From contig NC_043020.1 in assembly GCF_006345805.1 (NCBI RefSeq), positions 17,732,001 to 17,796,000 of the forward strand: a stretch of DNA of 64,000 nt, written 5' to 3'. Of the stretch, positions 10,150 to 64,000 are shown one piece after another; the first letter of the stretch is position 1; every line of letters begins with the position of its first letter. The position numbers and the translations under genes were made by a program. The notes under the pieces were generated by a model. That model worked only from the letters and a program-made list of their open reading frames with translations, did not search any database and was not told where the DNA came from. Source of the stretch: Octopus sinensis (lineage: Eukaryota).

Positions 10150-10379
10150 TATTTCTTTATTACCCACTAGGGGCTAAACACAAAGGGGACAAACAAGGAC
10201 AGATATAGATATTAAGTCGATTACATCGACCCCAGTGTGTAACTGGTACTTAATTTATCAACCCCGAAAGGATGAAAGGCAAAGTCAACCTCGGCGGAAT
10301 TTGAACTCACAACGTAACGGCAGACGAAATACCGCTAAGCATTTCGCCCGGCGTGCTAACGTTTCTGCCAGCTTGCCAC
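10150..10379 (-). mobile_element. SINE family M
   Basis: Full body and head; flanks aaatatct / aaatacct. Other family-M copies lie at about 1-120, 204-430, 7480-7765, 8430-8690, 16755-17145, 22800-23250, 24020-24440, 29205-29400, 34825-34945, 38198-38430, 46450-46680, 47085-47255 and 51008-51215. Confidence 0.85.
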
Positions 10380-11349
10380 TTTAAATACCTCAAATACCAC
10401 CTCTATAGAGTCCTATCAGAAGCAACCGTTATTAGACTCTTTCCTGCTGGATCCCTAGACATGACCAACCAAGACTATGGATATTATTCTTGGTCAACCC
10501 GTTGGTCTCCTGCCAGTTGGTTTGGCTTGAAGAATGATAGGACTGTTGTGGATAGTATGCCTTTGATCATAGGTCTGTTTGGTCATGTCCTGGGGTTAAA
10601 CAAAGATGACAACTAATACAACTGTTGCAAATTTTTGATTCCGCCACGTAGCAATCGCCCCCCCTCTCTTTCCCACCTCACAAGGATATCAACCTTGTCC
10701 CTATTTAAAAGAAACCATAGCAGTTAGGTTATTGATATAACTATAATGACTATGGATTAATGTAGCCTAAAAATATTAGCAGTGACATAAATTAATTGGA
10801 ATTCAGTTACACTCCAAGATGCACTTTCTTGTGAGTCTGGTGGCATAATTTCTTATATGATTTATTACATCCTGTAATATGTTTACTCTCTCTCACACAC
10901 ACAAACACACATATATTGCACTCACTTCTATGTGTGTCATATATATATATATATATTGTATGTATGTTCTTATCAGTTCTTAAAAATAAATATTTTCATT
11001 GCTAAACTTATCTAATCTAACCTTATCTTCTTAGCTTAATAAAGGACTAGGCATATGGACAAATAGTTTGGTGCAAATAGAAATAAAATTTATTGACATG
11101 ATGTGTATAAATATGTAGATATAAATAGGTACACAGATGGATGAATTCAATATTTATTTTTCTCTTTTTTTTTCTATTAAACTTTATTAAAATTCCAGCT
11201 GACCAAGTTTTAGGAATGTCAACATGCTGGTAAAATTCTACTTTGACCAATAAGAGAGCAGGAAGGAAGTTGACTGCAACTTGCTTGGTACCTTCTGCAA
11301 CAGCCAGAGTTTTCTAATAAGCAAATAACACTGTGAAACAAAACTTTTT

Positions 11350-21856: not shown

Positions 21857-24612
21857 GAGTGAATAAATACCTTAGACATGGTGTATCTAGGCGGTCACAT
21901 TAGCCAATATCCTACTGTATTTTTTTAAACAATCTATTAGGGTTTATTAATACATAGAGATTTGGCTGTTATTTCTAGCAGCTTGGGCTATCTCATTTGT
22001 TCAGTAGATCCTAATTTTAAGTAAATCTTGTTGATGATGCATGTGAGTTTATAATGACTAAAAACATAATTTGATGTGATGCTTAACAAAGTGGAATTTT
22101 TTTGTTTCCTTTTTTCCAGGAAATGTGTACCAAAATAAACCGGAAAACAGCCAATTTCACACTGATGATGCAACAATAACATATATTGTGAGAAATATGG
22201 TAATTATATACATTTCATGTTTGTTTTTATTTTAGATATTCACATGCTGCATTTAAAATACATCCCTTCACAAACACCATCATCACCATCATCATTGATT
22301 TAATGTTGACTTTTCCATACTCGCCTGGGTTGGACAGAATTTCTTGAGACAGGTTTTTCCATGGCAGGATGCCCTTCCTGTTTCCAACCCTTCTTTTGAT
22401 CATCAGTAGGTCTGCTTGATCTAAGATAACCTCGGCTCAACAACCACACAATTGCCATTGCCATCATTAACAAAATGTTTCTCACACCCTCCCATGACCT
22501 ACCCACTTATTACTGTTTTTTTTTCTTTTTTTTTGGCTTTTTTTTTTTATTTCATTAATCATTTTGACTATCTTTGCTAGTCACACGTGTTCAGTGTGTG
22601 TGTTTGTGTCAGTCAACACAGGGTGTACATACAAAAGTAATATTTCCCCATGACCAGACATGGTTTCACGGAAGCTTGGATACAAAGGACACTGCTTACA
22701 AGGTTATGATTGGTCTGGGGCTACAGTAGATGTCACTTGTCCAAGGTGCCAGCCACACAGTGAGACTGACCCCAAAAACAATGTGGCTGGAAAGTGAATT
22801 TCTTAACCATTTATGATAATGATAAATCTAGTAATAATGATGATAACAATAATAATCCTTTCTATTGTAAACAGAAGGCCTAAAATTTTTTAGGAGATGG
22901 ACCAAGTCAATCACATTGACCCCCAATGCTCAACTGATCCCCCTAAAAAATGAAAGGCAAAGTCGACCTTGGTGGAATTTGAACTCAGAACATAGAGAAG
23001 GAAGACAGTTTACTAAGTATTTTGTGAGATGCGGTAACGATACTGCCAGCTCACTGCCTTAATAATAATAATCCTTTCTATTAAAGGCACAAGGCCAGAA
23101 ATTTTGTGATAAGGAGATAGTCAATTACAACTGGTACTTATTTTATTGACCCTGAAAGGATTAAAGGTAAAGTCGACTTCAATGAAATTTGAACTCAGGT
23201 CATAAAGACAGATAAAATTCTGCCAGCTCACTGCCATGATGATAATGACGATGATCTTTTCTACTGTAGGCACAAATTTTTGTGGGGAGGGTGCCAGTTT
23301 ATTAGATTGATCCCCAGTATGCAACTGGTACTTAATTTATTGATCCCTGAAAGGATGAAAGGCAATGTCAACAATGGTGGAATTTGAACTCAGAATGTAG
23401 CAGCAGACAAAATACCTATTTCTTTATTACCCACAAGGTGCTAAACATAGAGGGGACAAACAACGACAGACATAGGTATTAAGTTGATTACATCGACCCC
23501 AGTGCGTAACTGGTACTTAATTTATGGAACCCGAAAGGATGAAAGGCAAAGTCGACCTCGGCGGGATTTGAACTCACAACGTAACAGCAGACAAAATACC
23601 ATTAAGCATTTCACCCAACATGCTAACAATTCTGCCAGCTCACTATCTTGATGACAATAATAATAATAATAATAATTATGATGATAGTAATAATAATAAT
23701 TATTATTATTTCGTTTTGGGATTTGGTTTGCAAGATTCTTTATATGAGTTCATGTGTTGAAGCATAGGAAAATAAAAATAAGAAATTTTACCGGTGCAAA
23801 AAGAAAATGACTTTCCCCAGACACAACAGAATAGTAATAATAATTTCTTGCACAAACTGAATGCCAGAAATGTGAGGAGAGGGACCAATTGATTTTTGTC
23901 AACCCCAGTACTTCTCTTGTATCAACCTTTGTTGGAGGCAAAGTAAAGTTGATCTCAATGGGATGGATAATAAAAAGTGAGAATATGTATCAAACTACTA
24001 GATGATAACGATGATGATTTCAAATTTTATCCCAGGGTCGACACTTTTTAGTGGTGGGAGTGAGTCAGTTACTTCACAACTGGTACTTATTTTATCAACC
24101 CTGTAAGGATGAAAGACAAAGTCAACCTTGGTAGAATTCGAACTCAGAACATAAAGACAGACAAGATGCCACTAAGTATTTTGTCTGGCATGCTAACAGT
24201 TCTGCCAGCTTGTGAATATTACTTACTACTAATAATGGTTTCAAATTTTGCCACAGGGGCAGCTATTTATTGGGGAGGAGATGAGTCAATTACATTGACC
24301 CCAGTGTTCAACTGGTACTTATTTTATTGACCTTGAAAAGATGAAAGGCAAAGTCGACCTCAGCAGAATTTGAACTCAGATTGGAGCAACAGGTGAAATA
24401 CCACTAAGCATTTCATTCAGCTTGCTGATGATTCTGCCAGCTCGCCACCTTACTTTTACTAATGTTATATAGGCCAGTTTTGGAAAAAATTTCTTCAAAA
24501 ATAATTTTTTGTTTATGAGGATATGTTATCCAAGCAGGCACCAGTTATGCATTTGTATCGATTGATAATTCTGGTTATCATTCGTGTGCTTATGTACTAA
24601 TGTTTATGGTCA

Positions 24613-24984: not shown

Positions 24985-25628
24985 TTTATTTTATTTCATC
25001 TAGTTTCAGCTCACGAGCTGTGGCCATGCTGGGGCACCGCCATTTGGTGTTGCTACATAATTTTACTTCACGAATGCTTTTTAGCAATTGACATTTGGTG
25101 CATGAGAGAGTTCGATGCAGCTGCTCTCATCTGCACCTCCTGCTGTGAAGTTGGCTCGTCTGGGACACCTGACAAGAAGAGGTCCAGCTTTATTTTGAAG
25201 ACACCTACATCCACCCCATGTAGGTCTCTCAGATCCTTCGGGAGGATATTAAAGAGCTGTGGACTTCTGAAGCGCAGGCTATTGCAGTATCTTGTCCTAC
25301 ATCTTGATGGCAAATTTGGAGTCCTTGGCACTATGAAGTGGCGCCCAGTTCTAGTATTTGTGTAACTCTCAATGCCAAAGTTTGGGACAAGTCCTTCCAG
25401 GATCTTCCAGAAGTGTTTTATGGCATATCTTTCTCGACTACACTCTAAGGAATAGAGTCTTAATCTCTTGAGTCTTTCACAATAGCTTATATGCTGCATA
25501 CAGGCTATCTTCTTTGTGTAGCTTCGTTGGATTGCCTCAAGTTCTGAGATTAATTTGACATTGGTTGGTGACCATAGCTGAGAGCAATAGTCAAAGTGGC
25601 TTAGGACAAGTGTCCTCCAGAGGACCAA
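24985..25628 (-). mobile_element. 5'-truncated CR1-type LINE: ORF2 C-terminus plus 3' UTR and tail
   Basis: ORF 25068..25628 (LVLSHFDYCSQLWSP...LEAIQRSYTK...YCERLKRLRLYSLE...LFNILP...FKIKLDLFL) matches the CR1-clade post-RT signature; followed by GGCGGTGCCCCAGCATGGCCACAGCTCGTGAGCTGAAACTAG and an A-rich tail. Confidence 0.9.
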
Positions 25629-26092
25629 TAATTTTAAAAAAACGATTATTCTATGTATATTCTCTGTTTTCTATAGACTATTAATTATATATAAGACGGG
25701 CTTCTTTCAGTTTCCATCTACCAAATCCACTCACAAGGCTTTGGTCAACTCAAGGCTATAGTAGAAGACACTTGCCCAAGGTGCCACACAGTGGGACTGA
25801 ACCTGGAATCATGTGATTAGGAAACATGCTTCTTACCACACAGTCAAACCTGTACCATTTGACAAAAATAAGGCCAGGAATGGTCACAGGTAGAAATCCT
25901 TTCATCATAGATCAATAGCCCTAACAAACTAAAAGCCCTCTATATTGTCAGTCAACTCACGAGAAATAGCAGCCAAATTCTCTCGCTCTCCCCTTTCACT
26001 CTCTCTCTCCAAATCACATTCTATTGTCTTAACGTTTTGGCATTCAGATTATTCTTTCATATACCTTACTTATTTATTTACATTGTTTTTAA

Positions 26093-26490
26093 ATAGGCAT
26101 AGGAGTGGCTGTGTGGTAAGTAGCTTGCTTACTAACCACACAGTTCTGGATTCAATCCCACTGCGTGGCACCTTGGGCAAGTGTCTTCTACTATAACCTC
26201 GGGCCGACTAAAGCCTTGTGAGTGGATTTGGTAGACGGAAACTGAAAGAAGCCCATTGTATATATGTATATATACGTATCTACGTATGTGTATATGTTTG
26301 TGTGTCTGTTTGTCTGCCCCCAACATCGCTTGACAACTGATGCTGGTGTGTTTACATCCCCATAACTTAGCGGTTCGGCAAAAGAGACCGATAGAATAAG
26401 TACTAGGCTTACAAAGTATAAGTCCTAGGGTCAATTTGCTCGACTAAAGGCAGTGCTCCAGCATGGCCACAGTCAAATGACTGAAACAAT
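26093..26490 (+). mobile_element. tRNA-derived SINE family A (internal AT/GT microsatellite, CR1-like 3' tail), full length
   Basis: A box TGGCTGTGTGG, B box GATTCAATCCC, CORE-like CACCTTGGGCAAGTG, tail GGCAGTGCTCCAGCATGGCCACAGTCAAATGACTGAAAC. Confidence 0.9.
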
Positions 26491-29535: not shown

Positions 29536-30009
29536 AATGGAAATTGTATTTGTGATATCTGTACCGGTGGCACATAAAAAGCACCATCCGAATGTAGCTG
29601 ATGCCAGCGCTGCCTTGACTGGCTTCTGTGTCGGTTGGACTTAAAAAGCACCCACTACATTCACGGAGTGGTTGATGTTAGGAAGGGCATCCAGCTGTAG
29701 AAACACTTCCAGATCAGACTGGAGCCTGGTGCAGCCTCCCGTTTTCCCAGACCCCGGTCAAACCGTCCAACCCATGCTAGCATGGAAAACAGACGTTAAA
29801 CGATGCTGCTGATGATGATATATATATAATTTTCTCTATACATGTTTTTTGTTGTTAAATACTCTGAATTTCTTGAAATTCTGCAAAAGGCTATTTGGAT
29901 TTACCTGGGATATGTATTCTACTAACATTTCCTGGTATCTGATTGTTGAACATTCATAACCAAATTCTTTTAATACTGAATACTTTATTAATATTTGCCA
30001 GAATTTTTT

Positions 30010-32085
30010 AATCCCATTTTTTTCTCCACCACTGCCTCATCTCCGAAGGTTTCTACCTCCATTTCCACCCCACTCTCCACTCTGCTTCAGCCATCCAACC
30101 CATACTCCATACTACTTCTTACCACCTTATGCACACCACCATTCGTTCCAATCTCTCCAAATTACATACCATCAACCACCTCCATCTCGCTTATTCCATC
30201 TTCTTCTCCTTCCAATGCACATTCGGTTACATAATCCATTTAAATCATCTCTTCTGTGAATTTCTCGCTCGCGCTAAACAACGTAAACTCCTCGCTCCTC
30301 CATTCTGTCACTCGCAATGCCACTACCCCAACTCCTCCCCCACCCCTCCCTCCTCGATACACTTCCCCCTCATCCTCACTCCAACCCCCAACCCCTCTCT
30401 CTCCTCCCAGCCTTCCACTACCCCCACACCTGACCCATCCCCTCCTCTCCAGTTCAGTCTGTTGTTACCATTCCTCCTGATCTTCCCCTCTCTGAGCTGG
30501 TGCGCTCTCTTCTCAGTAGAAGTCTGCACTTCATCCCCCTCACTCCATCCAGTAACAAATTTCAGACTCGTGCTGATATTCATAGCTTTCTGTGCCATGT
30601 CAGGCTATATGCACTATTCCACAACACTCCACCTGCATCTAAGGAAGAAGACTGCTTCACCGACCTGGGCCACTGACCATCCCACTGGATGCCAGCTCTT
30701 GGCCAGTACCAAGTAGTCAATCATTTTGCAGGCATCTGTCAACTTGTAGACCAGTTTAATTTTCGCAGGCATCCCCGACATCTGAATATCTTCCCAGCTA
30801 AACTGTCGGCTCTTCGATGTCTCCGACACTGCAAAGACATTATCATAAAACCGGCCAACAAGAGTGGAGCCATGATGCATGGACCTCTACAAGGCTGAAG
30901 GTCTCTTCCAGCTTCAAGATACCTCCTTCTGTCCTCTGCTCTCCAACCCCATGCCTAGCTACCACAGATGGTATCCTCCACTATCCATGACCTCATCTCT
31001 CCTCCCGTCTCCCTCCCACCACCTCCAACCTCATTGTCCATATGCCCTGCACCACCACCATTAACTTCCTTCCCAAAATCCACAAACCCAACAACCCTGG
31101 CTACCTCATCATCTCCGCCTGTAACTGTCCCTTGGAACTGATCTCTAAATACCTCAACCATGTCCTTTCCCCTGCTAGTGGCTTCCCTTCCCTCCCACAT
31201 CCACAATACTAACCACGCTCTTTGTCTCTTCATCTCTTTCTCCTTCCCTCCTGGCCCCTCTAAACGTCTCTTACTCTTGATATCAAGAGTCTATATACAA
31301 TGATCCCACACCACGAAGGACTTCTTGCCCTCAAACACTTCCTAGACCCAACCTCCAACCTGACATGTCCTCACTTCTTCGTCTGGCTGAACTTGTTCTC
31401 TCCCTCAACTACTTCTTGTTTGCGGGGGAGTTTTACCAACAGATCTCAGAAGTGGCCAGGAATTAATCTTCTCTCTTCGCTCCTTTGCACCACATGGGCT
31501 CAACTCCCTGCCACTCTTCATCTGACTCCCCTCCTCTCCTTTCTTCATCTCACACCTACTTCCTATCTTCACTACTACCAACCTCACCTCCCTTGCCCTG
31601 ACAACTGCTTCCTCTCTTCACCCCTAAACATCCCACTCCCACATAACCCACCCCTACCCTACATCCTCACACCCCACCCTCGCATCCCCACACCCCAACA
31701 CCATACACCACCACCCCACACACACTAGCACTGACCATTTCCCATCATCCACACACCCACACATTACAGGTGCACATACTTACGCACACATCCACACATC
31801 AAAGTCACCAGCCCCTATCCACATGCACACGCACCTTCATTTTCCCCATCTTCCTAACTCTCCTGTCTAACTACCTTTATCCAGCCGGCCGCTATAATTG
31901 ACCACTAGCTCCAAAAGGTTTTTTTATTCTCTCTCTCTGTTTCCTCATGTTCCTTTCTGTTGAAGAGCATAGGCTTGAAACGTAAAAGACTTTCTCACCT
32001 TCTCGAGCATTAAACTAATACACATGTTTGTTGTTTATATATTTGTCTTCGTCTTTTGTTTTTCTGTAAATTTCAACTATATGTA
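30010..32085 (+). mobile_element. Decayed, internally deleted Penelope-like retroelement (Neptune-like RT) with 3' pseudo-LTR
   Basis: Frame-shifted pieces DIIIKPANKSGAMM, FLPKIHKPNNPG, FTLDIKSLYTMIPHHEGLLALKHFLD, LAELVLSLNYFLFAGEFYQQISEVA, then ELIFSLRSFAPHGLNSLPLFI* (stop 31523-31525), resembling a PLE C-terminus. The terminal repeat at about 31888-32085 is shared with 18450-18643. Confidence 0.85.
31953..31989 (+). ncRNA. Minimal hammerhead-like motif (type B, CUGUUGA core) in the PLE pseudo-LTR
   Basis: CTTT-CTGTTGA-A-GAGC(ATAG)GCTT-GAA-ACGT-A-AAAG. Confidence 0.5.
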
Positions 32086-34348: not shown

Positions 34349-35251
34349 TGTATTAATAAATAAAAACTTATGGTTGTTTGATGAGGCTTGTCTATTTACT
34401 TTACTTTGGCCAGGATCCTACTCGGTCTTCAAAGACAAAGCCATTTCACCAAGCATCTTGATTCCAGTATCACCACTTTCAGTTCATAGATAGAATCCAA
34501 TCCTGTCCTCTTTCAGGTTGTTAGTAAATGTCAGACAATGTCTCTCACATTTGCCTATCATCATCATCATCATCATCATTTAATGTTCATTATCCATACT
34601 GGCATGAGATTAGACAGTTTGACCAGGGCTGGCAAGCTGAGGGGCTGCACCAGACTCCAGTCTGATTTTTTGACATGGCTTTTACAGTTCGATGCCCTTC
34701 CTGACGCCAACCACTCTGAGAGTGCAATGAGTGCTTTTATGTGCCACCAATAAGTGTGCCAGTTGTGTGACACTGAGTTCCCAATTATTTTAATAGTTTG
34801 ATTGAAACACATGAGAGATATATTGTAGTTAGAAATAAAATAATGGTTTCAAATTTTGGCACAAGGCCAACAATTTCCAGGAGAAGGGGTAAGTCGATTA
34901 CAAGAATTTTACTTAGAGCACTAACGATCCTGCCAGCTCATCACCACCCTAATTATAAATATAATAATGAGAGTTAATTAAAACTAGAAGCATTAGATAA
35001 TGTAGTTCTTGATGCACTGTGTCTGGAGTAAGAAATGGATGGACTGGTCACAACAAGAATATCTTTAGCTATAAAGCCTGTACAATCAGGACAGACCTAG
35101 GGTTAAACAACTACAGTAATAACAAGAAGATAAATGAAGATGATAGCACCAATATACTGCCATACCATTCAATAGGTATTACCTTACTACAACCTCATTG
35201 AAGAAGACAATTGTATTCATTTCCACAGTACAAGTTAAGCTTGCACTTTCT

Positions 35252-35654
35252 TATTTCTTTGTTGCCCACAAGGGGCTAAACATAGAGGGGACAAACAAAG
35301 ACAGACAAAGGGATTAAGTCAATTACATCGACTCCAGTATGCAACTGGTACTTAGTTTATCGACCCTGAAAGGATGAAAGGCAAAGTCGACCTCAGTGGA
35401 ATTTGAACTCAGAACGTAACGGCAGATGAAATACCTATTTCTTTACTACCCACAAGGGGCTAAACACAGAGAGGACAAACAAGGACAGACAAACTGATTA
35501 AGTCGATTATATCGACACTAGTGTGTAACTGGTACTTATTTAATCAACCCCGAAAGGGTGAAAGGCAAAGTCAACCTTGGTGAAATTTGAACTCAGAACG
35601 TAGCAGCAGATGAAATAACGCTAAGCATTTCACCCAGTGTGCTAACGTTTCTGC
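35252..35654 (-). mobile_element. SINE family M tandem dimer (two bodies, one head)
   Basis: Junction ...gatgAAATACC|tatttctttactaccc...; the same architecture occurs at about 23255-23645. Confidence 0.8.
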
Positions 35655-35769
35655 TTCAAATTCCTCATTGTGCTTCAAGAATGGAGTTGTAGATGTAATA
35701 TGTTGTCAATTATAAAACCAGCTTTATTTTATAAAACCAGCTTTATTTTATAAGGTAGACACCTTGTCT

Positions 35770-37142: not shown

Positions 37143-40100
37143 ATCATCATCATCATCATCATCGTTTAGTGTCCGTTTTCCATGCAAGCATGGGTTGGAC
37201 GGTTCTCCTGGGGTCTGAAGCCAGAAGGCTTCATCAGGCCCAGTCAAATCTGGCAGTGTTTCTATGGCTGGATGCCCTTCCTAACGCCAACCACTCCTTG
37301 TGTGTAGTGGGTGCTTTTTACGTGCCACCCGCACAGGTGCCAGACAGTGCTGGCAAACGGCCACGAACGGATGGTGCTTTTTATGTGCCACCGGCACGAG
37401 GGCCAGGCGAGGCTGGCAACGGACACGAACGGATGGTGCTTTTTACGTGCCACCGGCACGAGGCCATGTCGGGGCGGCGCTGGCAACGGTCGTGAAATGG
37501 AAGGTTCTAAAACTCGGCACCACTAAGCAAATCATCATAGAAAACACACATCTGGCTTCTTTATATATATACAACAGGCATCCCTCAGTTTCCATCTACA
37601 AATACAAGGCTTTGATCAACCGAAGGCTATAATAGAGGACTCTTACCCAAGGTGCCACACAGTGGGATGGAACGCAGAGCCATGTGGTTGGGAAACAAGC
37701 TTTTTACCACACAGCCATGCCTGCACCTATTGCTGGCTTTCTTTTATTTTTGTTGTTATTATTACAGATTTTTTGTTGTTGTTGTTTCATTTATTTGCAT
37801 TAATTTTCATTTAGGGCATAATTAAATTGGACTAATTTCATTAATCTGATATGGCTGCAGTAATTAAATCAATTTACTAGCAGCGATTAAAAAAACAAGT
37901 AAACCATGAAAAACGCATTTCATAATTTGTTTCATGTGAGGTGATGTTGTGATATCAGACATTATGAGGAGTTGGTTTTATGGTTAGATTTGATTCTAAA
38001 ACTTTGAATGTCATAGTTATTGATTATGGAAGAATATTGACTGAATGAAGACAGTTAAAGCTATTTATTTTCAAAGATTTTATTTATTTATTTATTTATT
38101 TTTAGCTAGCATGGCTGTGTGGTTAGGAAACTTGTTTCCCTGCAGCATAGTTTTGGGGTTCAGTCCCACTGCATGGCATTTTGGGCAAGTGTCTTCTTAT
38201 TTCTTTATTACCCACAAGGGGCTAAACATAGAGGGGACAAACAAGGACAGACAAAGGGATTAAGTCGATTACATCAACCCCGGTGCATAACTGGTACTTA
38301 ATTTATCGACTCTGAAAGGATGAAAGGCAAAGTTGACCTCAACGGAATTTGAACTCAGAACATAATGGCAGACGAAATACCGTTAAGCATTTCGCCCAGC
38401 ACGCTAACGTTTCTGCCAGCTTGCCGCCTTCTACTACAGCCCCAGACCAACCAAAGCCTAGTCATTAGATTTGGCAGATAGAGACTCAATGAAGCTTGTT
38501 ATGTGTGTGTGTGTGTGTCTCTTTGAATGTGTGTTTGCGTCTCCTTGTCTTGTCACCACTTGATAGTCGGAAATGAGTATCACTGTCATACAAGAGGTGT
38601 CATTCATTTCCAATATTCTCTGAGAACATGTCTGGCCATGGTATGGCTGTGTGGTAAGAAGTTTGCTTCCTAACCACATGGCTCTGGGTTCAATTCCACT
38701 GTGTGGCACCTTGGGCAAGTGTCTTCTACTATAGCCTCTGGCCAGCCAAAACCTTCTGAGTGGACTTGGTAAACAGAAACTGAAGAAAGCCAGTCATATA
38801 TGTATATATAAGTGTGTGTGTGTGTCCATCATTTGACATTTGGTGGTTTTGTGTTTACATCTCCATGCCTTAGCAAAAGTGATCAATAGAATAATATTAG
38901 GCTTTCAAAAAATAAGTACTGGGGTCAATTTGTTTAACTAAGATTCTTTAAAGTGGTGCCCCAGCATGGCCGCAGTCTAATGACTGAAACAAGTAAAAGA
39001 AGGATAAAAGAAGAAATACCAGCAATTTCAAGGGAGAGTGTAATTCGATTACACCACCCCCAGTATTCAACTAGTACTTTATTTTATTGACCCTGGAAGG
39101 ATGAAAGACAAAGTCAACCTCAGTGGTATAAACCTTGCAGTATAAAAATGTCAGTAGACCTCTGGTCTGTGACGTTGAGACCCCTTTCGGTCATGACACA
39201 GACCATGGGATTACACCTAGAAAGTTACCCTCCCAGGCACAAGTCCGGGCAAAGTTGTTTATGGAAGACCAGCAGTCACCCATGCATACCGGCCTCCTCT
39301 CTCCACGCCACCAGTGTTATCCAAGGGAAAGGCAAAGGTCGATACAGCTTGGCACCTGTGATTTCACAACTCATTTTGACAGCTGAGTGAACTGGAGCAA
39401 TGTGAAATAAAGTGTCTTGCTCAACACGCAGCCCGGTCCGGGATTTGAGCTCACAACATCATGATCGTAAGCTCGACGCTGTAACCACTGAGCCATGCGC
39501 CTTCACCCAGTGAAGTGACATTACAACCAAGACATTTTCTGCCATTCTCTCTATCACTATCTCTCTCTCTCTTTCCCTGTATGGCTCTGTGGTTAGGAAG
39601 CTTGCTTCCCAGCTACATTGTTTCGGGTTCAGTCCCACTGTGTGGCACCTTGGGCAAGTATTTTCTGCTATAGCCTTGGGTCAACCAAAGCTAGCTTTGT
39701 AATTGAATTTGGTTGGCAGAAGTTACTGCTCTGTGTGTACATGTGTGTGTAAGTAAGTGCTTGTGCCTCTTAACAGAGAGTACATCTAAGATTACATTAT
39801 TCAATATATACTTCCTTTTCTAAGGGATTATGTGAAGTGGATTTATTACTATTACTGATAAATTTAGAGCTGATAACTAAACTAAAATGTTTTTATTAAT
39901 CACATCATCAAAATCTCGCAGTTACAAGATAATGAAAGATTAATTCAAAACAGTATTAATAAATAAGCATTACATTTGACAGGGTGATATGGATAATACT
40001 AAAGGGTTAAAAATTTGAAGATGGCTACTAATAGAAACACCAATCAAATGCTTTATTTAATCAGTAACCTGAAATAATGCATTTGATTGGTTAAATCTCT

Positions 40101-48165: not shown

Positions 48166-49083
48166 TGTGTACACATGAATATTTGTGTGTTTTGTATAAT
48201 TTTTTGCATTAGGTTCAATCCCACATGTGGAACCTTGGGCAAGTGTCTTTTACTATAGCCTCAGGCCAACCAAAGCCTTGTAAGTGAATTTGGTAGATAG
48301 AAACTGAAAGAAGCCCATCGAGTGTGTGTTTGTCCTTCCCCCTCACTACTGGTCCTGGTGTGTTTACATCCCCATAACTTAGCAGTTCAGCAAAAAAGAC
48401 TGATAGAATAAGTACCAAGCTTTAAAGAAGTAAGTATTGGGGTCAATACATTCAACTAAAAATTCTTTGAGGTGGTGCCCCAGCATGGCTGCAGTCTAAT
48501 GACCGAAACGAGTGAAAAATAAAAGATATATTGCAATTAATGGCTTAAGCATTCAGTAAAATTTAGCCCCAGGTTAGCTGACCTAAGATCACTGACATTT
48601 CACCCTTGCCCATCCTGTCATATTATACATCTCAAAGTACATTGTTCAATGTGATCTTCCTCATCCAAGACAAATAGTAGGGTGTGATTACAGAAAAATT
48701 TCATTACTATTTCTAGCAAACCAAGAGACTGTATAGGGACTTCCTTATTGGCTAGTAGTCACCTTAGAGGTTATTGTTTAACCCTTGGTCATCTGACTGA
48801 ACAGATCTTTTAATTGAAGGTATTCCAGCTATGTTCATCATCATCCTCATCATTTAACGTCCTCCCCTCCTTCCAAGTTCACAAGGGTTTGATGGTTTGA
48901 CAGGAGCTGGCCAGGTATAAGCTTACACCATACTTCTGTCTGTGTTGGCATGGGTTTTTTTATGGCTAGGTGTCCTTCCTAACACCAACCACCCTGCAGA
49001 GTAGGCTGAGTGCATTTTACATGGCACTAGCACAGGCAAGGTCAGTTTTGGCTTGGTTTTTACAGTTGGATGCCCTTCCATAT

Positions 49084-49314
49084 TATTTCTTTATTGCCCA
49101 CAAGGGGCTAAACATAGAAGGGGCAAACAAGTAAAGACAAAGGGATTAAGTCGATTACATCGACCCCAATGCGTAACTGGTACTTAATTTATCGACCCCG
49201 AAAGGATGAAAGGCAAAGTCGACCTCGGCGGAATTTGAACTCAGAACGTAACGACAGATGAAATACGGCTACGCATTTCACCCGGCGCGCTAATGTTTCT
49301 GCCAGCTCGCCGCT
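49084..49314 (-). mobile_element. SINE family M nested in an RTE-tailed repeat
   Basis: TSD TTCCATAT at 49076-49083 and 49315-49322. Confidence 0.85.
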
Positions 49315-50587
49315 TTCCATATGCCAACCACCACACAAAGTGGACTTGATGCTTTTTTACATGGCACCTGCACTGGCAGGGTCACCAAGTAACTCACAAG
49401 ACAAGGAATCTTTGAAAGGGGAAGGAGCATTGGAGGAAGGGTCTTGTGCCATATGGTAGCATTCTGTATTTCTCACAATTATTTGTATTTTATGTAGCTC
49501 TATATTATCCAGTGTATCTTCATTTTTGTTTAAGGTGGTATTTTTTATCTTTTACTTGTTTCAGTCATTTGACTGTGGCCATGCTGGGGCACCACCTTGA
49601 AGCGTTTTAGTTGAAGAAATTGACCTCAAAACTGTTTTTTAGGCCTTGTGCTTATTCTATCGGTATCTTTTGCCAAACCACGAATTTATGTAGACATAAA
49701 CACACCAACACCGGTTGTCAAGTGGTGGTGGGGGACAAGCAAAGACACACACACATATACAACAGGCTTCTTTCAGTTTCTTTCTGTCTACCAAATCCAC
49801 TCTCAAGGCTTTGATCAGTCCAAGGCTAAAATCAAAGGCACTTACCCAAGGTGCCAAACGGGGACTGAACCTGGAACCATGTGGTTGGGAAGCAAGATTC
49901 TTACCACACAGCCTCAGCTGTGCCTTTTCTTCTTTGGTAGGGTATAATTTGAGACAAATTTGACTGCTGCTTCTAATAGCCTGAGTGATTATGTATAGAC
50001 TCACACATTTCTTGAATTAGTAGCAGTAGCAGCAGCAGTTGTCATCCTCATTTTAACATCCACTTTTCTCATTCTTGCACAGCTCAAATGAAATTACTGA
50101 CCTGTTCCCAAACAAACTAATGTTTCCTTTAGCCCTTCAAACATGAAATGCACAGTGGTCAGAGATATTTTCCCAAAGGATTGCAAATAAATGACACCAC
50201 TTAAATGATGGTGATATTTGTTTACAACTAGTACGCGATATCAGAACAAGCACACACATACACACACACACACAACAGGCTTCCTTCAGCTTCTGTCTAC
50301 CAAACCCTTTCACAATGCTTTGGTCATTCCAGGTCTATAGTAGAAAACATTTGGCCAAGGTGTTGTACAATGGGGCCAAGCCTGAACACACGTTTACTCT
50401 GGGTTTTGTGCAGTGGGATTGAACCTGAAAGCACATGTCTGTAAAGCAAATATTTTAACCATCCAGCCATGACACCACCTTCATAGCTATACTATACAGT
50501 AGGGACATTTTAAAGTGTTTTGAAAGAATAGGTTTTAATTCTATAACACATCTATTATAATAAGGACATGTGATCTTCATTCTTTTC

Positions 50588-51939: not shown

Positions 51940-53639
51940 ACTAGAAATAGCTACCCCTAACTGGGTATTATTCTAACTGGTTCTAACTTCATTGCTGCTA
52001 TCTCATTCATCTATTTACCTTCTATTCAGGGAGCCCCCCAACTCCTAGTTGCTGAGAAAATAAATTCTGTAACCAACCTTTTCCCTTGTTTTCTTTTAAG
52101 GCAGCACAACATATTGTCTTCAAGATAAATGTCAGGAGATATTGCAAAGCCTTACCACTTTTTAACAAAACGACTTCTTGAAATTTACGTGTGTGTGCGA
52201 GAGAGAGAGAGAGAGTGTGAGAGAGAGAGAGAGAGAGAGAGAGTGTGTGTGAGTGAGTGTGTGCGAGAGAGAGAGTGTGTGTGTGTTCTGTGTTGTGTTC
52301 TGTATTGTGTGTAATAAAATTATAAAGAAATGGTTAAAAAATAACAAACTATGCTTCAAATAATGAAGTCAGTGAATATAAACAGACTATTAAAATTCTA
52401 TTTTGAAAATGTTAAATAATAAATTTCTTTTATACTCTAATATTCTTTTTCGTTGCTCTTATATACATTTTTTATAGATACATTTTTTTAATCTACATTT
52501 ACATGTGCACATTTGGGTGTGTATACCTCACACTTTCTCTGTGCCTTTGTATGTATGCATCTATCTATCTATGTCATTCTGCCATAATATTTATGAGTTT
52601 CCTTTGTGTGTTTGTGTGCATGTGTGTGTGTATGTGTGCATACATGTGTGTCTATATATATACACACACAAACACACGTGTGTGCACACACTTATATTCT
52701 TTCTTATTGACTCTTTTGTGAAAAGCATTTTTAAAAAAATATATATATAAGAAATTCTGTTTAAAAACAATAAAACACTAATTTACGATGTAACTTTTAT
52801 TTTTCTCTAAAATAATTTATGGTTGCTTCAGAGATATATTTCTCGATTTCCTCTATCTTATGTTTTCGAGTGAGAGACAGACACACAGACAGATAGAGAA
52901 AGAAAGAGAGAGAGAGAGAGAGAGTGTGTGTGTGACTGTAGATAGAGATGTGTGTACATACATATTCTATATATGTATGAATATAAAACTTAAGAGAAAA
53001 GAAAAGCTCTGTGTGTAAAGGCCTTTATATGCATGTAATGTATGTATATCTATATATGGATGTGTCTATACATGCATGTAAATATGTGTGTATGTATTTG
53101 TATATGTGTGCAATGCATGTATTTCTATATTTATATATGTGCATCTATATATGCATGCAAATATGTATGTACCTGTCTGTGTCTCTAAGCATGTACATAT
53201 ATATGCATTCTATGTACGAATATATACATGTGTGTGCATGCCCGCGCATGCGTGTCCAATGATGGCTTAACTGGTTGAAACTTTGAAGTCATTTTTGGTG
53301 AATTGACCACATGGTCCTGGGTTCAGTCCTACTGCATGGCACCTTAGGCAAGTGTCTTCTACAATAGTCTCAGGCTGACCAAATCCTTGTGAGTGGATTT
53401 GGTAGATGGAAACTGATAGAAGTCCATCGTATATATATATGTGTGTGTGTGTGTTTGTCTTCATCTTTGTGTTTATTTCTTGCCATTGCTTGAGAACCAG
53501 TGTTGGTGTATTTATGTCCCTGTAAATAGTATTCTACCAAAAGTATTGAGTAATTGTCCAGTTTAATGTAAAATTATTTTTATTATAACATAAAAACAAA
53601 CATCATATATATGTATAAACATATATATATATATATATG

Positions 53640-59948: not shown

Positions 59949-60575
59949 TTACTCAAAGTAACCACCCTCAGCTTCCGCGATGGTTTTAAGTTGGTCCCAG
60001 AACCTGGCACATGCGTCCTTCCCTGTGTCCCTGGGAAGATCTTTAAACACTTTTTTGATCTTGGCCTCCAACTCAGCCTTGGTGTTGCAGGCAGAATAAT
60101 TACTAGTAATCCCATAGGATTACAATTAGAGGAATTAGAAGGCCAGAAATAGGGGCTGGTGAAGTATGGGATGGAGCAGTATGGGATGGAGCCAAATCCT
60201 GCTGCCACACATATGGCCTTTCAGTTCAAATGCACTGCAGCCAGGGTTTGACCACAGTCCCCACCGGCTTCACATAGCCGTCTGAATTGAGCCTTAGGCC
60301 CTCTTCAAAGATGTAGGGTGGCATGACGTCACCTTCACTGGAGAGACACCCGAAAACCATCACAATTTGGGGGCACTTAGTTTTTATGATAATTGAAATA
60401 CCACATGGATTGTTGTTCTGGGCAATGTGCATCTTGTCTAGGTAGGAGTTCTTTTCATCTGAAAAGAAACAGATTATCCTCAGCTCAACAGGATGCCTCA
60501 GTTTCTTTGTGTTTGTCAAGCGGTTTTCCTTGGCCTTGGTTGTCATTCAGGACCAGCTTCATCATGGTGTCTCAT
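59949..60575 (-). mobile_element. Decayed Tc1/mariner-superfamily transposase (maT/DD37D-like)
   Basis: Fragments FFSDEKN, VMVFGCLSSEGDVMPP, RPYVWQQDLAPSHT, FWPSNSSNCNPM (decayed WPPNSPDLNP) and C-terminal KAELEAKIKKVF...AEAEGGYFE* (stop 59949-59951), broken by frameshifts and deletions. Confidence 0.85.
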
Positions 60576-61773
60576 ATATATATATATCAATAATAACAAA
60601 GGGTAAAATTAATTAATTAAGAAGTAATCAGTAATTTCACCAAGTAGAATTCGGCATGAAAAAGACCATTTCATGGTAAGCTTAAGTAATACTTTATAAT
60701 TAGGGTTCAGCAAAGATTTGCTTCACCACATACCGAAGTTTAGAAATAGCAGTCAAAAAATCTTAGCTATTCCTTCTACTTTAAAAGGGGCTCCCAGAAA
60801 AACCAAAGTACTTGAAAACAATCCATGCAGGCAAAAGGGAACAATAACGAAAATCAATCGATATTAGGTGATAGGCTGCTTTCAGTTTCCATCTACCAAA
60901 TCCACTCACAAGGCCTTGATCAGCCTCAGGCTATAGTAGAAGACACTTGCCCAAGGCACCACACAGTGGGACTGAACCAGGAGCCATGTGTTTGGGAAGC
61001 AAGTTTTTTGGTGGGGGCTTTGTTCAAAAATAAACATTTTTCTAGCAAGTTTTGTATCATAGAACCAGTGTCAAGCTGGTTAGTATTAAAGTGTTGAAAA
61101 TATCTGGCCCACAATGAGCCACAGATTGGACAGATAGCTTCTTTCTTATTGTAAACCAAATTTCTTGTAAAGCGATATATTCATTTCATTTCATCCTTGC
61201 GTCATTCTCCCCTCCATCACTCAACCCTCCCATCACCCACCCCTCCATCAGTCGTCTCTCTATCACTCATCTCTCCATCTCTCATCTCTTGGAATGTTTG
61301 CACAGACTTACTGACTTTAGGAAGTAGTCTTACTCAGTCATGAGTTGATTTCCACCATATAATTATATACATAGGTGCAGGAGTGGCTGTGTGGTAAGTA
61401 GCTTGCTTATGCACCACATGGTTCCAGGTTCAGTCCTACTGCATGGCAACTTCGGCAAGTGTCTTCTACTATAGCCTTGGGCTGACCAAAGCCTTGTGAG
61501 TGGATTTGGTAAATGGAAACTGAAAGAAGCCCGTCGTATATATGTATATATATGTATATATATGTAACTGTGTGTGTATATGTTTGGAGTTATAGTAAAA
61601 AACACACTTCCCTGTGGGAATGAACCCAAGTAAATTTCTTAACCAACACAGCACCTGTACCCAGATTTTGAAAATAATCTTGATCTAGGTTATGTTTAAT
61701 AAGGGTTTTTCTCCAATAAAGATCAAAATTTTACTTTGTTTAATTTGCTTGAATTCTTGAATTATGTTTTATT

Positions 61774-61814
61774 TGCTCATTAATTTTCCTTTTTTCTTTC
61801 TCTTTCTTCTTCAG
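61774..61814 (+). promoter_or_regulatory. Splice acceptor (branch point, polypyrimidine tract, CAG) upstream of the large ORF; putative exon start 61815
   Basis: tgCTCAT branch-like motif, then ttttccttttttctttctctttcttcttCAG ending at 61814. Weaker alternative AGs lie at about 61967, 61986 and 62142. Confidence 0.65.
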
Positions 61815-62151
61815 AAATCTATTACTATCTGAAGTGGTTCAACATCCATAACTACCAATTTCTTATAAGCGCTACTACCTTCAAGACTATTACAGTTGTC
61901 AACAAGGAATATTCCATCTTTCTATGTATCAGAAATTTTCCCGAGGATGCTGATTTCTTTGCCACAGTTGTTTCCTAATCTTTCAGTATTCTTTTAATTA
62001 TACTGCCCAATTCTCACTCACTGAAGAATATGCTCAGTATATTGATATATGAGGCAGAATACCGGCATTATGCATTAAAAAGGTTGTTTTCTAATTTGAA
62101 AGACATTCACCGATAACATTGGCACATGTTGTACGCTACAGAAGCGACAAC

Positions 62152-64000
62152 ATGGAAACTATTTTGCAGATATCTCTTTCCTGGTTAATTCTTGCTTGCA
62201 TATTACAATCTTTACTATTGTACATACCCACAGTTGCTGGTTATTCCAACGATACAATATTATTAAAATATGTCCCAGCCTCTAAGACATTCATTCAGTC
62301 TCATGGCTTAATGCATATTCCAATCAAGAGAACTCGGACCAATTTAGAGATATCACCTTTAGGCTCCAACAGAAAAATTGGACGGCTTAAAAAACAAGAG
62401 TTTAAAATCTCACACATGTCTGCTGCAGAGTTAAAATGTAGATATAGAAACATCCTTTACAAATTATTCTCTACCAAAAATCTACCAATCAGAAGCATAA
62501 AATATAACTGCCACGATACAGTTTCCAACACACAACAACCAATTGATGGTTATTCTCCGCAGTTGCATTTGGGACGTTTTAAGCGGTCTGCAGACAGTTT
62601 ACGAACTCAAGCCAAGAAGAAGGCAAAAAGGAAATCTGCTGAAGAACAAAATGTTTCCTCCAACAATACTCTATCCACTAACAACAATCTCCCCAACCCA
62701 ACTCCGAAAATTACTAAACCAACAAAAACTGCTGCTTCCTCCAGCCATAATCCACGGCGTAAGACTAAAAAACAAACAGAAACTGCTGCTTCCTCAAGCC
62801 GTAATCGGCGGCGTAAGACTACAAGACCAACAATAGCTGCTGCCTCTTATGTTCGTAAGCCCCGTTCTAAGATTATACAGCCAACAGCCGCTGCTTCATT
62901 AATCTATAATCCACGATCCAAGGTTATAAATCCAACAGCGGCAACCTCATCTCGATCTAAGAATATAAAGCCAACTGCAGCTGCATCCTTCGTCCATAAT
63001 CCTCCTGATAAGATAACACCAACACCAACCACCAGTTTTATTAAAACTACAATGATTACAGATGTTGACACTAAAAGTATTCCTTACAAAACACAGCAGC
63101 CAACAGCTTTCTCTTCATTGCCAAAGATTGTTTCTTCATCAATTCCATTACCCCAGAGTTCCATCACAGCTTCAAAATCAGAAGCTATTCTTTTGTCTTC
63201 CAGTCACAAAACAGCTTCAACTTCTTTGTTTGTTCAATCAACATCATCAGCTCCTCAAAGTAAACCTTCAATGGCAATGGTGACTCCCATTTATAATTCC
63301 TTACCATTAAATACAGTCACCACTTCCACAAATATTCACCCTGTAACTAGTTCCAAGTTTGAACCTAGTGGATTAACTTCACATCTTTTGCATTCTGGTA
63401 GCGAAGGGCCTCTAATGACCAAAATGCCAACACCATTTATAACCTTACAACTGAAGAACGACTCAACTGATACCAACACTCAACCCAAAACTGAAAACTC
63501 TCTTCACTTGACCCCAACTTATGCCCCGACAAATAGACGGTCAAAGAAGAATGTATCACTTCTAAGTAATCAGCTGCGCACTGCATCACTGTCAACTTCA
63601 AACATTGTTCTACTGTTGAACAATTCTTTATTGGCTACCTTAGACACCAAACAGAGTTCCTTGCCAGTTCAGACAACCACAGTCCACAATCCAAATTTAT
63701 CCTCAAAGACCCTCAAACTTGATTCAACAACAAAAACACTTTCCAGCAATAATAATTCAAGACTACTGACAAAACCTGTCAATGAAGAAACTACAGTTAT
63801 TTCTAAATCTTCTCTTCCTCCCACTAACAGTCTATTCAAATCTTTTACTCTTCACCCAAATACAGTTTCCAGCAGTCAATTATTTACACTGCTGCAACCA
63901 ACACCAAATACTGGTTTTAATTCTACTAGTTTTAGTCAGACATTTCCAAGTTCTAAATACAAATTTTTTGTCAGCACAAACGGGGCCTCTGTTGAAAGTA
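62152..64000 (+). CDS. Large first coding exon (3' partial) of a secreted or cell-surface mucin-like protein: signal peptide, RFKR site, basic repeats, S/T/P-rich region
   Basis: Manual translation from ATG 62152 (context gacaacATGg; in-frame stop TAA at 62092-62094) is open for 616 codons to the window end. N-terminus METILQISLSWLILACILQSLLLYIPTVAG-YSNDT is a hydrophobic signal peptide; RFKR at 62575-62586; the remainder is S/T/P-rich with several N-X-S/T sequons. Not in the ORF track because there is no stop inside the window. Confidence 0.9.
   Translation, partial: METILQISLSWLILACILQSLLLYIPTVAGYSNDTILLKYVPASKTFIQSHGLMHIPIKRTRTNLEISPLGSNRKIGRLKKQEFKISHMSAAELKCRYRNILYKLFSTKNLPIRSIKYNCHDTVSNTQQPIDGYSPQLHLGRFKRSADSLRTQAKKKAKRKSAEEQNVSSNNTLSTNNNLPNPTPKITKPTKTAASSSHNPRRKTKKQTETAASSSRNRRRKTTRPTIAAASYVRKPRSKIIQPTAAASLIYNPRSKVINPTAATSSRSKNIKPTAAASFVHNPPDKITPTPTTSFIKTTMITDVDTKSIPYKTQQPTAFSSLPKIVSSSIPLPQSSITASKSEAILLSSSHKTASTSLFVQSTSSAPQSKPSMAMVTPIYNSLPLNTVTTSTNIHPVTSSKFEPSGLTSHLLHSGSEGPLMTKMPTPFITLQLKNDSTDTNTQPKTENSLHLTPTYAPTNRRSKKNVSLLSNQLRTASLSTSNIVLLLNNSLLATLDTKQSSLPVQTTTVHNPNLSSKTLKLDSTTKTLSSNNNSRLLTKPVNEETTVISKSSLPPTNSLFKSFTLHPNTVSSSQLFTLLQPTPNTGFNSTSFSQTFPSSKYKFFVSTNGASVES
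62719..63018 (+). repeat. Coding tandem repeat, six units of 39-54 nt (PTxAAS...R/K-rich)
   Basis: Units PTKTAASSSHNPRRKTKK / QTETAASSSRNRRRKTTR / PTIAAASYVRKPRSKIIQ / PTAAASLIYNPRSKVIN / PTAATSSRSKNIK / PTAAASFVHNPPDKIT; all unit lengths are multiples of 3. Confidence 0.85.

What the first reader, a model, noticed from the sequence alone, without database searches (positions are those of the whole stretch)
62152..64000. Hidden ORF of at least 616 codons encoding a secreted pro-protein-like mucin, absent from the ORF track
Seen: an ATG in good context, an upstream in-frame stop and 616 open codons in a window where no other stretch comes close. The protein has a 30-aa signal peptide, a ~110-aa basic segment with two Cys (C96, C120), RFKR/S, basic repeats and then >300 aa of S/T/P-rich sequence. 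Known: very long S/T-rich first coding exons occur in mucins and in the ectodomains of adhesion GPCRs and other surface receptors. Inference: I recognise no domain in the visible part, so it may be a lineage-restricted cephalopod secreted or adhesive protein; the downstream exons will decide this.
Basis: partly seen in the sequence, partly recalled or inferred. Interest (0 to 1): 0.7.

Follow-up and report, generated by a model that had tools for sequence, protein, structure and literature searches.

The report
Octopus PRRT3/4-type seven-helix receptor gene
The long open reading frame is real, but it is the outside-facing first half of an already catalogued octopus membrane protein of the poorly understood PRRT3/4 receptor-like family, not a secreted mucin.

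Summary
From ATG 62152 the + strand stays open for 616 codons to the window's end. The next-longest open stretch in the window is 234 codons, and shuffles of the region never exceed 235.

The ORF is cut by the window edge. An exhaustive HMMER scan found the full product, 1250 aa, 100% identical over residues 1-616. It lies on an Octopus chromosome (GCA_006345805.1, CM016882.1) as one uninterrupted 3753-bp CDS. The window's last 11,849 bases are identical to that record.

Residues ~690-955 form seven transmembrane helices, followed by a ~300-aa acidic, Ser-rich tail. Family membership in PRRT3/4 rests on four results:
- a precomputed Pfam hit, PF25987 (PRRT3);
- profile hits to PF25987 proteins, including fish PRRT4;
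- every family-invariant residue in a 14-sequence alignment;
- an AlphaFold model (pLDDT 82) whose 50 best PDB matches are all GPCRs.

The window part is therefore the signal peptide plus a basic, Ser/Thr-rich, fast-evolving extracellular N-terminus (dN/dS 0.54, against 0.15 and 0.10 downstream). Nothing outside Octopus resembles it.

Orthologues in O. bimaculoides and O. vulgaris are already in NCBI and UniRef under this family name. The gene is ordinary and annotated, so interest is low.

The parts
61786..61814 (+). Polypyrimidine tract ending in CAG. It is the probable splice acceptor of the single coding exon (inferred).
   Evidence: The sequence ttttccttttttctttctctttcttcttcag is read directly. 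It is conserved in the three Octopus species. No transcript data were available.
61815..62151 (+). Probable 5' untranslated part of the coding exon. It holds an out-of-frame upstream ATG at 62126, a 20-codon uORF that overlaps the main start.
   Evidence: The 446 bp upstream of the ATG are 96% identical between O. sinensis and O. bimaculoides, against 89-91% downstream of the stop. The uORF was read.
62152..62241 (+). Start codon and signal-peptide-like hydrophobic segment (aa 1-30, METILQ...PTVAG|YS).
   Evidence: This is the highest hydropathy peak of the N-terminal half (2.15). It is invariant in three Octopus species. Relatives P0006, P0007 and the insect proteins also begin with hydrophobic leaders. 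Cleavage was not tested.
62242..62586 (+). N-terminal basic segment (aa 31-145) with Cys96 (62437-62439) and Cys120 (62509-62511). It ends in the furin-type motif RFKR (62575-62586).
   Evidence: Net charge is +15. The two Cys and RFKR-S are invariant in three species. No Pfam or PDB match.
62587..63018 (+). Highly basic region (aa 146-289), including about six degenerate 18-aa repeats, PT.AAAS...NPR(R/S)K.., at 62716-63018.
   Evidence: Tandem Repeats Finder gives a 54-bp period x 2.4 at 62716-62843. The six units are aligned. Net charge is +26 over aa 146-295. A 4-codon indel in unit 5 separates O. bimaculoides from the other two species.
63019..64000 (+). Ser/Thr/Pro-rich, non-repetitive, probably glycosylated extracellular stalk (aa 290-616). 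It continues beyond the window to about aa 675, then into the 7TM domain.
   Evidence: 43.6% S+T+P and six of the nine N-glycosylation sequons of the window part lie in aa 291-616. The continuation is seen in P0001 and L001. dN/dS is 0.57 for aa 296-685.

Best explanation
Bases 62152-64000 are the first 616 of 1250 codons of a single-exon Octopus gene. The gene encodes a PRRT3/4-family, GPCR-like seven-transmembrane protein.

Shown:
- The reading frame continues without a break for 1905 bases beyond the window.
- The full protein has a hydrophobic leader, a ~660-aa basic Ser/Thr-rich region, seven hydrophobic helices (aa ~691-953) and a ~300-aa acidic Ser-rich tail.
- The helix bundle and tail are homologous to PRRT3/4 proteins of other animals.
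- The predicted bundle resembles solved GPCRs.

Inferred:
- The leader takes the N-terminus into the secretory pathway, so the whole window-encoded part faces the outside of the cell or the lumen.
- There it is probably N- and O-glycosylated. It acts as an extended, positively charged, mucin-like stalk or ligand-capturing region.
- Furin-type convertases may cut it at RFKR145|S.
- By analogy with human PRRT3/4 (PMC13581589), the 7TM core with its tail would signal or traffic through GRK phosphorylation and arrestin binding, rather than through constitutive G-protein coupling.
- The ectodomain evolves about three times faster than the core. That is why it looks like an orphan when seen alone.
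For: - ORF statistics.
- Full-length product P0001, 100% identical over residues 1-616, found by an exhaustive scan of 1.84 billion representatives.
- P0001 is encoded as one 3753-bp CDS on GCA_006345805.1 CM016882.1, with a precomputed Pfam hit PF25987:PRRT3. The window's last 11,849 bases are identical to that locus.
- Orthologues in O. bimaculoides and O. vulgaris are also single uninterrupted CDSs with PF25987. UniRef names them PRRT3/4 domain-containing.
- A profile search with the TM region gave 14 hits, 13 of them carrying PF25987. E-values run from 1e-66 to 2e-9 and include Hucho hucho 'Proline rich transmembrane protein 4' at 4e-14.
- The octopus protein keeps all 18 invariant columns of the 14-sequence alignment, within the blocks AW.xH, R, DxY, FP.LTS.F, H, W.WW and R..E.
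- Topology: seven hydrophobic segments; 20 K+R in the predicted inside loops against 1 outside; 10 sequons in the ectodomain.
- AlphaFold2 with the alignment gave pLDDT 81.6 and pTM 0.83, with seven long helices.
- The Foldseek top 50 PDB matches are all GPCRs, with query-normalised TM-scores mostly 0.43-0.59.
- Coding constraint: the frame is kept in three species with only in-frame indels. dN/dS is 0.54 for the window part (Fisher p = 0.013), 0.15 for the 7TM region and 0.10 for the tail.
- Literature: PRRT3/4 are 'superdark' GPCR-like 7TM proteins that recruit arrestin, show no constitutive G-protein coupling, and carry arrestin codes in the tail (PMC13581589).
Against: - The local Pfam scan returned nothing for the full protein or for the TM region alone. 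The PF25987 hit therefore rests on a precomputed table plus my own profile search.
- Foldseek E-values are weak (0.014-0.07) and TM-scores are only about 0.5, so 'GPCR-like' means a shared seven-helix topology, not close structural homology.
- Signal-peptide cleavage, glycosylation, furin cleavage, surface location and arrestin binding are all untested for the octopus protein.
- The leader has no positive charge before the hydrophobic core (Glu2) and could be an uncleaved anchor.
- No transcript evidence could be examined.
- The family name says 'proline-rich', but this N-terminus has only 7.8% Pro.
Confidence: 0.93

Rival explanations
1. It is a secreted mucin-like pro-protein. The ORF would encode a soluble, furin-processed, heavily O-glycosylated protein with no membrane anchor.
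For: - A signal-peptide-like leader, the RFKR|S motif, 36-44% S+T+P and 9 sequons in the visible part.
- No domain hit in residues 1-616.
- If furin does cut at residue 145, a 115-aa fragment could be released.
Against: - The same frame runs on into seven transmembrane helices with no stop or intron, in three species.
- There is no PTS tandem-repeat array in the Ser/Thr-rich part.
- No vWD, C8, TIL, CK or SEA domains.
- Leu (10%) and Asn (7%) are high for a mucin domain.
Confidence: 0.03
2. It is the ectodomain of an adhesion-class or other canonical GPCR.
For: - A long Ser/Thr-rich N-terminus in front of a 7TM bundle.
- The best fold matches are GPCRs of classes A, F and C.
Against: - No GAIN/GPS, 7tm_1, 7tm_2, 7tm_3 or Frizzled Pfam match, even at E <= 10.
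- No sequence match to any PDB GPCR.
- The sequence relatives are all PF25987 proteins.
- Human PRRT3/4 showed no constitutive G-protein recruitment (PMC13581589).
Confidence: 0.03
3. It is a chance or decaying open frame: a pseudogene, transposon remnant or low-complexity artefact that is not translated.
For: - The window is dense in SINEs, microsatellites and transposon debris.
- The region is A/C-rich, which lowers stop frequency.
- The ectodomain's dN/dS of about 0.55 is fairly relaxed.
Against: - P is about 7e-14 after correcting for local composition.
- The ORF region is not part of any repeat family in the window.
- It is a single orthologous locus in three species, with the frame kept over 1250 codons and only in-frame indels.
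- dN/dS is significantly below 1.
- The downstream domains are under strong constraint.
Confidence: 0.01

Closest known systems
PRRT3 / PRRT4 (proline-rich transmembrane proteins 3 and 4; Pfam PF25987), described in 2026 as 'superdark' GPCR-like 7TM proteins (PMC13581589)
   Same: - Homologous 7TM core (E 4e-14 to fish PRRT4; 1e-66 to the nearest PF25987 protein) with every family-invariant residue of the 14-sequence alignment.
- The same plan: leader, long low-complexity N-terminus, seven helices, then a long disordered Ser/Thr-rich tail with arrestin-code-like patterns (12 observed against 6.6 +/- 2.9 in shuffles).
- A predicted GPCR-like fold.
   Different: - The N-terminus is much longer than in any relative retrieved: about 675 aa before the conserved PDW..W..AW motif, against 24-330 aa.
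- It is basic and Ser/Thr-rich rather than Pro-rich or acidic PE-rich.
- It carries 18-aa basic repeats and a furin-type motif.
- The whole CDS is one exon.
- None of the biochemical properties of the human proteins has been tested for it.
Mucin-like stalks of membrane receptors and membrane-tethered mucins (for example the mucin-like region of dystroglycan; comparison from general knowledge)
   Same: A signal peptide, an N-terminal segment ending at a furin-type site, then an extended Ser/Thr/Pro-rich region with many glycosylation sequons, all encoded in one large exon.
   Different: - No SEA, dystroglycan or cadherin-like domains.
- No tandem PTS repeats.
- The anchor is a seven-helix bundle, not a single span.
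- There is no sequence similarity.
Adhesion GPCRs
   Same: A very long extracellular N-terminus on a 7TM bundle, with possible proteolytic processing of the ectodomain.
   Different: No GAIN/GPS domain, no 7tm_2 signature and no adhesion modules.

Membership tests
PRRT3/4 family (Pfam PF25987) | Significant match of the protein to the family profile PF25987 | tested here: met
   A precomputed Pfam hit, PF25987:PRRT3 (unmarked, so E <= 1e-5), is recorded for the window's own product and for both orthologues. Caveat: the local hmmscan did not list it. The model seems to be missing from that copy.
PRRT3/4 family (Pfam PF25987) | Sequence homology of the 7TM core to named PRRT3/PRRT4 proteins | tested here: met
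   A profile of the octopus TM region hit 13 PF25987-bearing proteins. They include Hucho hucho PRRT4 (E 4e-14, 30% identity over 68% of the query), a Salmo trutta PRRT3/4 domain protein (6e-14) and insect proteins (3e-26 to 7e-20).
PRRT3/4 family (Pfam PF25987) | Conserved family residues (AW.xH before TM1, R and DxY after TM2, FP.LTS.F in TM3, H in TM4, W.WW before TM7, R..E in TM7) | tested here: met
   The octopus sequence carries all 18 invariant columns of the 14-sequence alignment.
PRRT3/4 family (Pfam PF25987) | Seven transmembrane helices, N-terminus outside, C-terminus inside | tested here: met
   Prediction only. Hydropathy gives seven segments. The charge count is 20 K+R inside against 1 outside. 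The AlphaFold model has seven long helices, pLDDT 81.6.
PRRT3/4 family (Pfam PF25987) | GPCR-like fold of the helix bundle | tested here: met
   All 50 best Foldseek PDB matches are GPCRs, with probability ~1.0 and query-normalised TM-scores mostly 0.43-0.59. E-values are only 0.014-0.07, so this is similarity of topology, not close homology.
PRRT3/4 family (Pfam PF25987) | Arrestin recruitment and GRK-dependent phosphorylation, without constitutive G-protein coupling (PMC13581589) | not testable with these tools
   Only a motif count was possible: 12 arrestin-code-like Ser/Thr patterns in the tail, against 6.6 +/- 2.9 in shuffles.
PRRT3/4 family (Pfam PF25987) | Proline-rich N-terminal region (a naming feature, not part of the Pfam model) | tested here: not met
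   Pro is 7.8% of residues 1-616. The region is Ser/Thr-rich (28.6%) and basic instead. N-termini of relatives differ widely in composition, so this does not count against membership.
Secreted or gel-forming mucins | Soluble secreted protein, with tandem PTS repeats flanked by vWD/C8/TIL/CK or SEA domains | tested here: not met
   Seven TM helices follow in the same ORF. No such Pfam domains were found. There is no tandem array in the Ser/Thr-rich part.
Adhesion GPCRs | GAIN domain with a GPS site next to a family-B (7tm_2) bundle | tested here: not met
   No Pfam family at E <= 10 on the full protein or the TM region, apart from a chance Claudin_3 match at E 2.1.
Furin-processed pro-proteins | An R-x-K/R-R motif in a lumenal segment that is actually cleaved | tested here: inconclusive
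   The motif RFKR|S at 142-146, and RNRRRK at 217-222, are present and invariant in three closely related species. Cleavage itself cannot be tested here.

The most novel reading that the evidence does not exclude
In the octopus lineage a PRRT3/4-type GPCR-like receptor has gained a ~660-aa basic, mucin-like ectodomain with 18-aa repeats and a conserved furin site. It would then be a proteolytically processed receptor. Either its 115-aa two-cysteine N-terminal fragment is shed as a secreted factor, or cleavage unmasks a tethered ligand. That would be a mode of activation not described for this 'superdark' family.
Probability: 0.1. Interest if true: 0.45.

Novelty: already known. Interest (0 to 1): 0.15.

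Why it matters
As a gene it adds little. The exact protein and its orthologues are already in NCBI and UniRef under the PRRT3/4 family name.

The modest points of interest are these:
- PRRT3/4 were recognised as GPCR-like, arrestin-recruiting 7TM proteins only in 2026, and their ligands and functions are unknown.
- The octopus member shows how freely the extracellular N-terminus of this family changes in length, charge and composition while the helix bundle and tail stay under strong constraint.
- For the scan itself, the case shows that an ORF cut by the window edge can look like an orphan secreted protein when only its fast-evolving ectodomain is visible.

Tried and rejected
- Pfam and PDB sequence searches with residues 1-616 found nothing.
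- The word-indexed protein search found nothing with residues 1-616 or with the TM region as a single sequence, not even the protein itself. The candidate list was saturated or the words too few. The same search with a three-sequence profile at E <= 10 did work.
- The local Pfam scan of the full protein and of the TM region alone did not return PF25987, only a chance Claudin_3 match at E 2.1.
- Single-sequence AlphaFold of the TM region was poor (pLDDT 54) and was replaced by the alignment-based model.
- Rfam found nothing in the window.
- The bacterial promoter/terminator scan is not informative for a eukaryote.
- Pfam on seven other long ORFs of the window found nothing.
- The second hit of the exhaustive scan (P0002, E 7e-6, six short stretches) is a low-complexity repeat protein, and I dismissed it as compositional.
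- A transposon origin was rejected because the ORF region belongs to no repeat family of the window.
Full report
**1. The observation**

The + strand carries an ATG at 62152 in a good context (gacaacATGg), with an in-frame TAA at 62092. There is no stop up to the last full codon of the window, which gives 616 codons.

- The next-longest stop-free stretch in any frame of the 64-kb window is 234 codons.
- The other five frames of 62152-64000 hold 22-54 stops.
- The region is A/C-rich, which lowers the frequency of stop codons, so I shuffled it while keeping dinucleotides. In 2000 shuffles the longest open stretch was 235 codons. The in-frame stop count averaged 29.5 and was never below 14. That puts P at about 7e-14.
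- The three codon positions have clearly different base compositions.
- The ORF was missing from the 'ORF track' for a mechanical reason. ORF listing omits frames that run off the end of the source (tool description; one search lists nothing beyond 60546).

**2. What the window is**

The window is eukaryotic and repeat-dense. It holds several SINE families with 7-14 copies each and many (TA)n and (CA)n tracts. It has no Rfam hit. The ORF region belongs to none of the window's repeat families; the nearest SINE is at 61368-61586.

**3. The full-length product**

Residues 1-616 gave no hit in Pfam, in PDB sequences or in the word-indexed protein search. An exhaustive HMMER scan of 1.84 billion representative proteins found two hits:

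- P0001, 1250 aa, 100% identical over residues 1-616. This is the full product.
- P0002, a low-complexity repeat protein at E 7e-6, which I regard as compositional.

P0001 is encoded on NCBI assembly GCA_006345805.1, record CM016882.1, as one uninterrupted 3753-bp CDS. The last 11,849 bases of the window are identical to that locus, so the window comes from that chromosome. The ORF runs on for 1905 bases past the window's edge, and an AATAAA lies 41 bases after the stop.

The 90% cluster of P0001 holds two more proteins:

- XP_014773740.1, 'uncharacterized protein LOC106871669 [Octopus bimaculoides]';
- CAI9740092.1 [Octopus vulgaris].

UniRef names both 'Proline-rich transmembrane protein 3/4 domain-containing protein'. 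Both orthologues are also single uninterrupted CDSs.

**4. Anatomy of the whole protein**

| Residues | Feature |
|---|---|
| 1-30 | hydrophobic leader |
| 31-145 | basic segment (net charge +15) with two Cys, ending in RFKR |
| 146-289 | very basic region (+26 over aa 146-295) with about six degenerate 18-aa units, PT.AAAS...NPR(R/S)K.. |
| 290 to ~675 | non-repetitive Ser/Thr/Pro-rich stretch |
| ~676-690 | conserved juxtamembrane motif VPDWKAAKQEWKAAWHVH |
| 691-953 | seven hydrophobic helices |
| 954-1250 | acidic (-14), Ser-rich tail |

The loops predicted to face the cytoplasm hold 20 Lys+Arg, and those predicted to face outside hold 1. Ten N-glycosylation sequons lie in the ectodomain, nine of them in the window part. 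This fits an N-out, C-in topology like that of GPCRs. The entire window-encoded part would then be extracellular or lumenal. That holds whether the leader is cleaved or stays as an anchor.

**5. Family membership**

- The precomputed Pfam table lists PF25987 (PRRT3) for the product and for both orthologues.
- The local Pfam copy did not return it, so I tested membership independently.
- A profile of the TM region from the three Octopus sequences found 14 proteins, 13 of which carry PF25987. P0005-P0010 score E 1e-66 to 4e-39 at 34-39% identity. The hemipteran proteins score 3e-26 to 7e-20. Hucho hucho 'Proline rich transmembrane protein 4' scores 4e-14, and a Salmo trutta PRRT3/4 domain protein 6e-14.
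- In the 14-sequence alignment of the core, the octopus protein keeps all 18 invariant columns. These lie in the blocks AW.xH, R, DxY, FP.LTS.F, H, W.WW and R..E.
- AlphaFold2 with that alignment gave a confident model (pLDDT 81.6, pTM 0.83) with seven long helices. The single-sequence model had been poor.
- All 50 best Foldseek matches in the PDB are GPCRs: Smoothened, CCK-A, LPA1, S1P1, 5-HT1A, CB1, GPRC5D and others. Query-normalised TM-scores are mostly 0.43-0.59, and E-values are 0.014-0.07. This is a shared topology rather than close homology.

The fold result agrees with a 2026 paper. By mining structures, it identified PRRT3 and PRRT4 as 'superdark' GPCR-like 7TM proteins. They carry arrestin codes in their tails and recruit arrestin, but show no constitutive G-protein coupling (PMC13581589). 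Otherwise the function of PRRT3 is 'largely unknown'; there is a preliminary report of colocalisation with synaptophysin (PMC7417871).

**6. The window part within the family**

- Between O. sinensis and O. bimaculoides the ectodomain is 90.9% identical, the 7TM region 96.4% and the tail 96.9%.
- dN/dS is 0.54 for the window part, significantly below 1 (Fisher p = 0.013). It is 0.15 for the 7TM region and 0.10 for the tail.
- The frame is kept in all three species, with only in-frame indels.
- A Logan contig (L003, run SRR27666087) encodes a 51%-identical orthologue. Its similarity begins exactly at VPDWKAAKQEW (aa 676). The 32 residues visible upstream of that point (…PEPELEPTPKS…) are unrelated to the octopus ectodomain.
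- In the other relatives the stretch before this motif is 24-330 aa long and either acidic PE-rich or Pro-rich.

The visible 616 residues are therefore the fast-evolving, lineage-specific N-terminus of a conserved receptor-like protein.

**7. Mechanism**

Shown: this is one exon and one ORF, encoding a leader, a low-complexity ectodomain, a PRRT3/4 7TM core and a tail.

Inferred:
- The ectodomain enters the secretory pathway and is glycosylated.
- It forms an extended, positively charged stalk.
- The furin-type site RFKR|S lies in a compartment where convertases act, and it is invariant in the three species. They are too close for this to weigh much.
- The core and tail would work as in the human proteins, through GRK phosphorylation and arrestin.

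The tail has 12 arrestin-code-like Ser/Thr patterns, against 6.6 +/- 2.9 in shuffles. It shares the motif NGFVRFRT with the insect proteins.

**8. Rivals**

- Secreted mucin or pro-protein: excluded as a description of the protein by the contiguous 7TM region and by the lack of mucin domains or PTS arrays.
- Adhesion or canonical GPCR: excluded by the absence of GAIN or 7tm signatures, and by the family hits.
- Chance ORF, pseudogene or transposon remnant: excluded by the statistics, by single-copy orthology and by the constraint on the sequence.

**9. Gene structure around the start**

The 446 bases upstream of the ATG are 96% identical between O. sinensis and O. bimaculoides, against 89-91% downstream of the stop. 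A long polypyrimidine tract ending in CAG at 61786-61814 is conserved. It is a likely splice acceptor, which would make 61815-62151 the 5' untranslated part of the coding exon. No transcript data could be checked, so this is an inference.

**10. Verdict**

The thing itself is an ordinary protein-coding gene, already in the databases, of a known but poorly understood family. Interest is low. The only mildly unusual features are the exceptional length and basic, Ser/Thr-rich nature of the ectodomain, and its conserved furin-type motif.

Noticed in passing
window 62126-62188: An out-of-frame ATG lies 26 bases upstream of the main start. It opens a 20-codon uORF that overlaps the main ATG. The stretch is conserved in all three Octopus species, with one synonymous-type change in O. 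vulgaris.
   Followed up: partly
window 61705-62151: The 446 bases upstream of the start codon are 96% identical between O. sinensis and O. bimaculoides. That is more conserved than the 3' flank (89-91%) and about as conserved as the CDS itself. It suggests a 5' UTR or regulatory block.
   Followed up: partly
window 30001-32000: A block with GC 0.495 and GC skew -0.57, strongly C-rich on the + strand, stands out from the ~37% GC background. It contains a 21-bp repeat at 31628-31697 and two Pro/Ser/Thr-rich ORFs (30129-30716, 31300-31728) with no Pfam match. Its nature is unexplained.
   Followed up: partly
window, e.g. 61368-61586, 26090-26308, 38628-38846, 53261-53479; 10078-10393, 23345-23660, 35180-35679, 49012-49327: There are several interspersed SINE-like repeat families, 4-14 copies each in both orientations at 65-92% identity. 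Many end in (TA)n or (TATG)n tracts. One copy lies about 570 bases upstream of the gene's start.
   Followed up: no
window 62932-62949 region (aa 261-273) versus L004: The fifth 18-aa basic repeat is four codons shorter in O. sinensis and O. vulgaris than in O. bimaculoides, which keeps LIHN. This is an in-frame repeat-unit indel.
   Followed up: partly
window 25068-25628 (-) and 60226-60546 (-): Two ORFs look by eye like remnants of a retrotransposon reverse-transcriptase tail and of a mariner-type transposase. Neither gave a Pfam hit at E <= 0.01.
   Followed up: partly
L001 13000-13753 (C-terminal tail, outside the window); L003: The cytoplasmic tail carries a motif, (E/Q)NGFVRFRT(D/N)EELEELR, shared with the 51%-identical Logan orthologue. 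Its core NGFVRFRT is shared with the hemipteran relatives. The octopus proteins end in T-N-V or T-N-I, which fits a class I PDZ-ligand pattern.
   Followed up: no
tools (versus 27): The local Pfam library did not return PF25987 for a protein whose precomputed annotation lists it. Likewise the word-indexed protein search did not return the query's own cluster for single-sequence queries. Negative results from these two tools should be read with care.
   Followed up: partly
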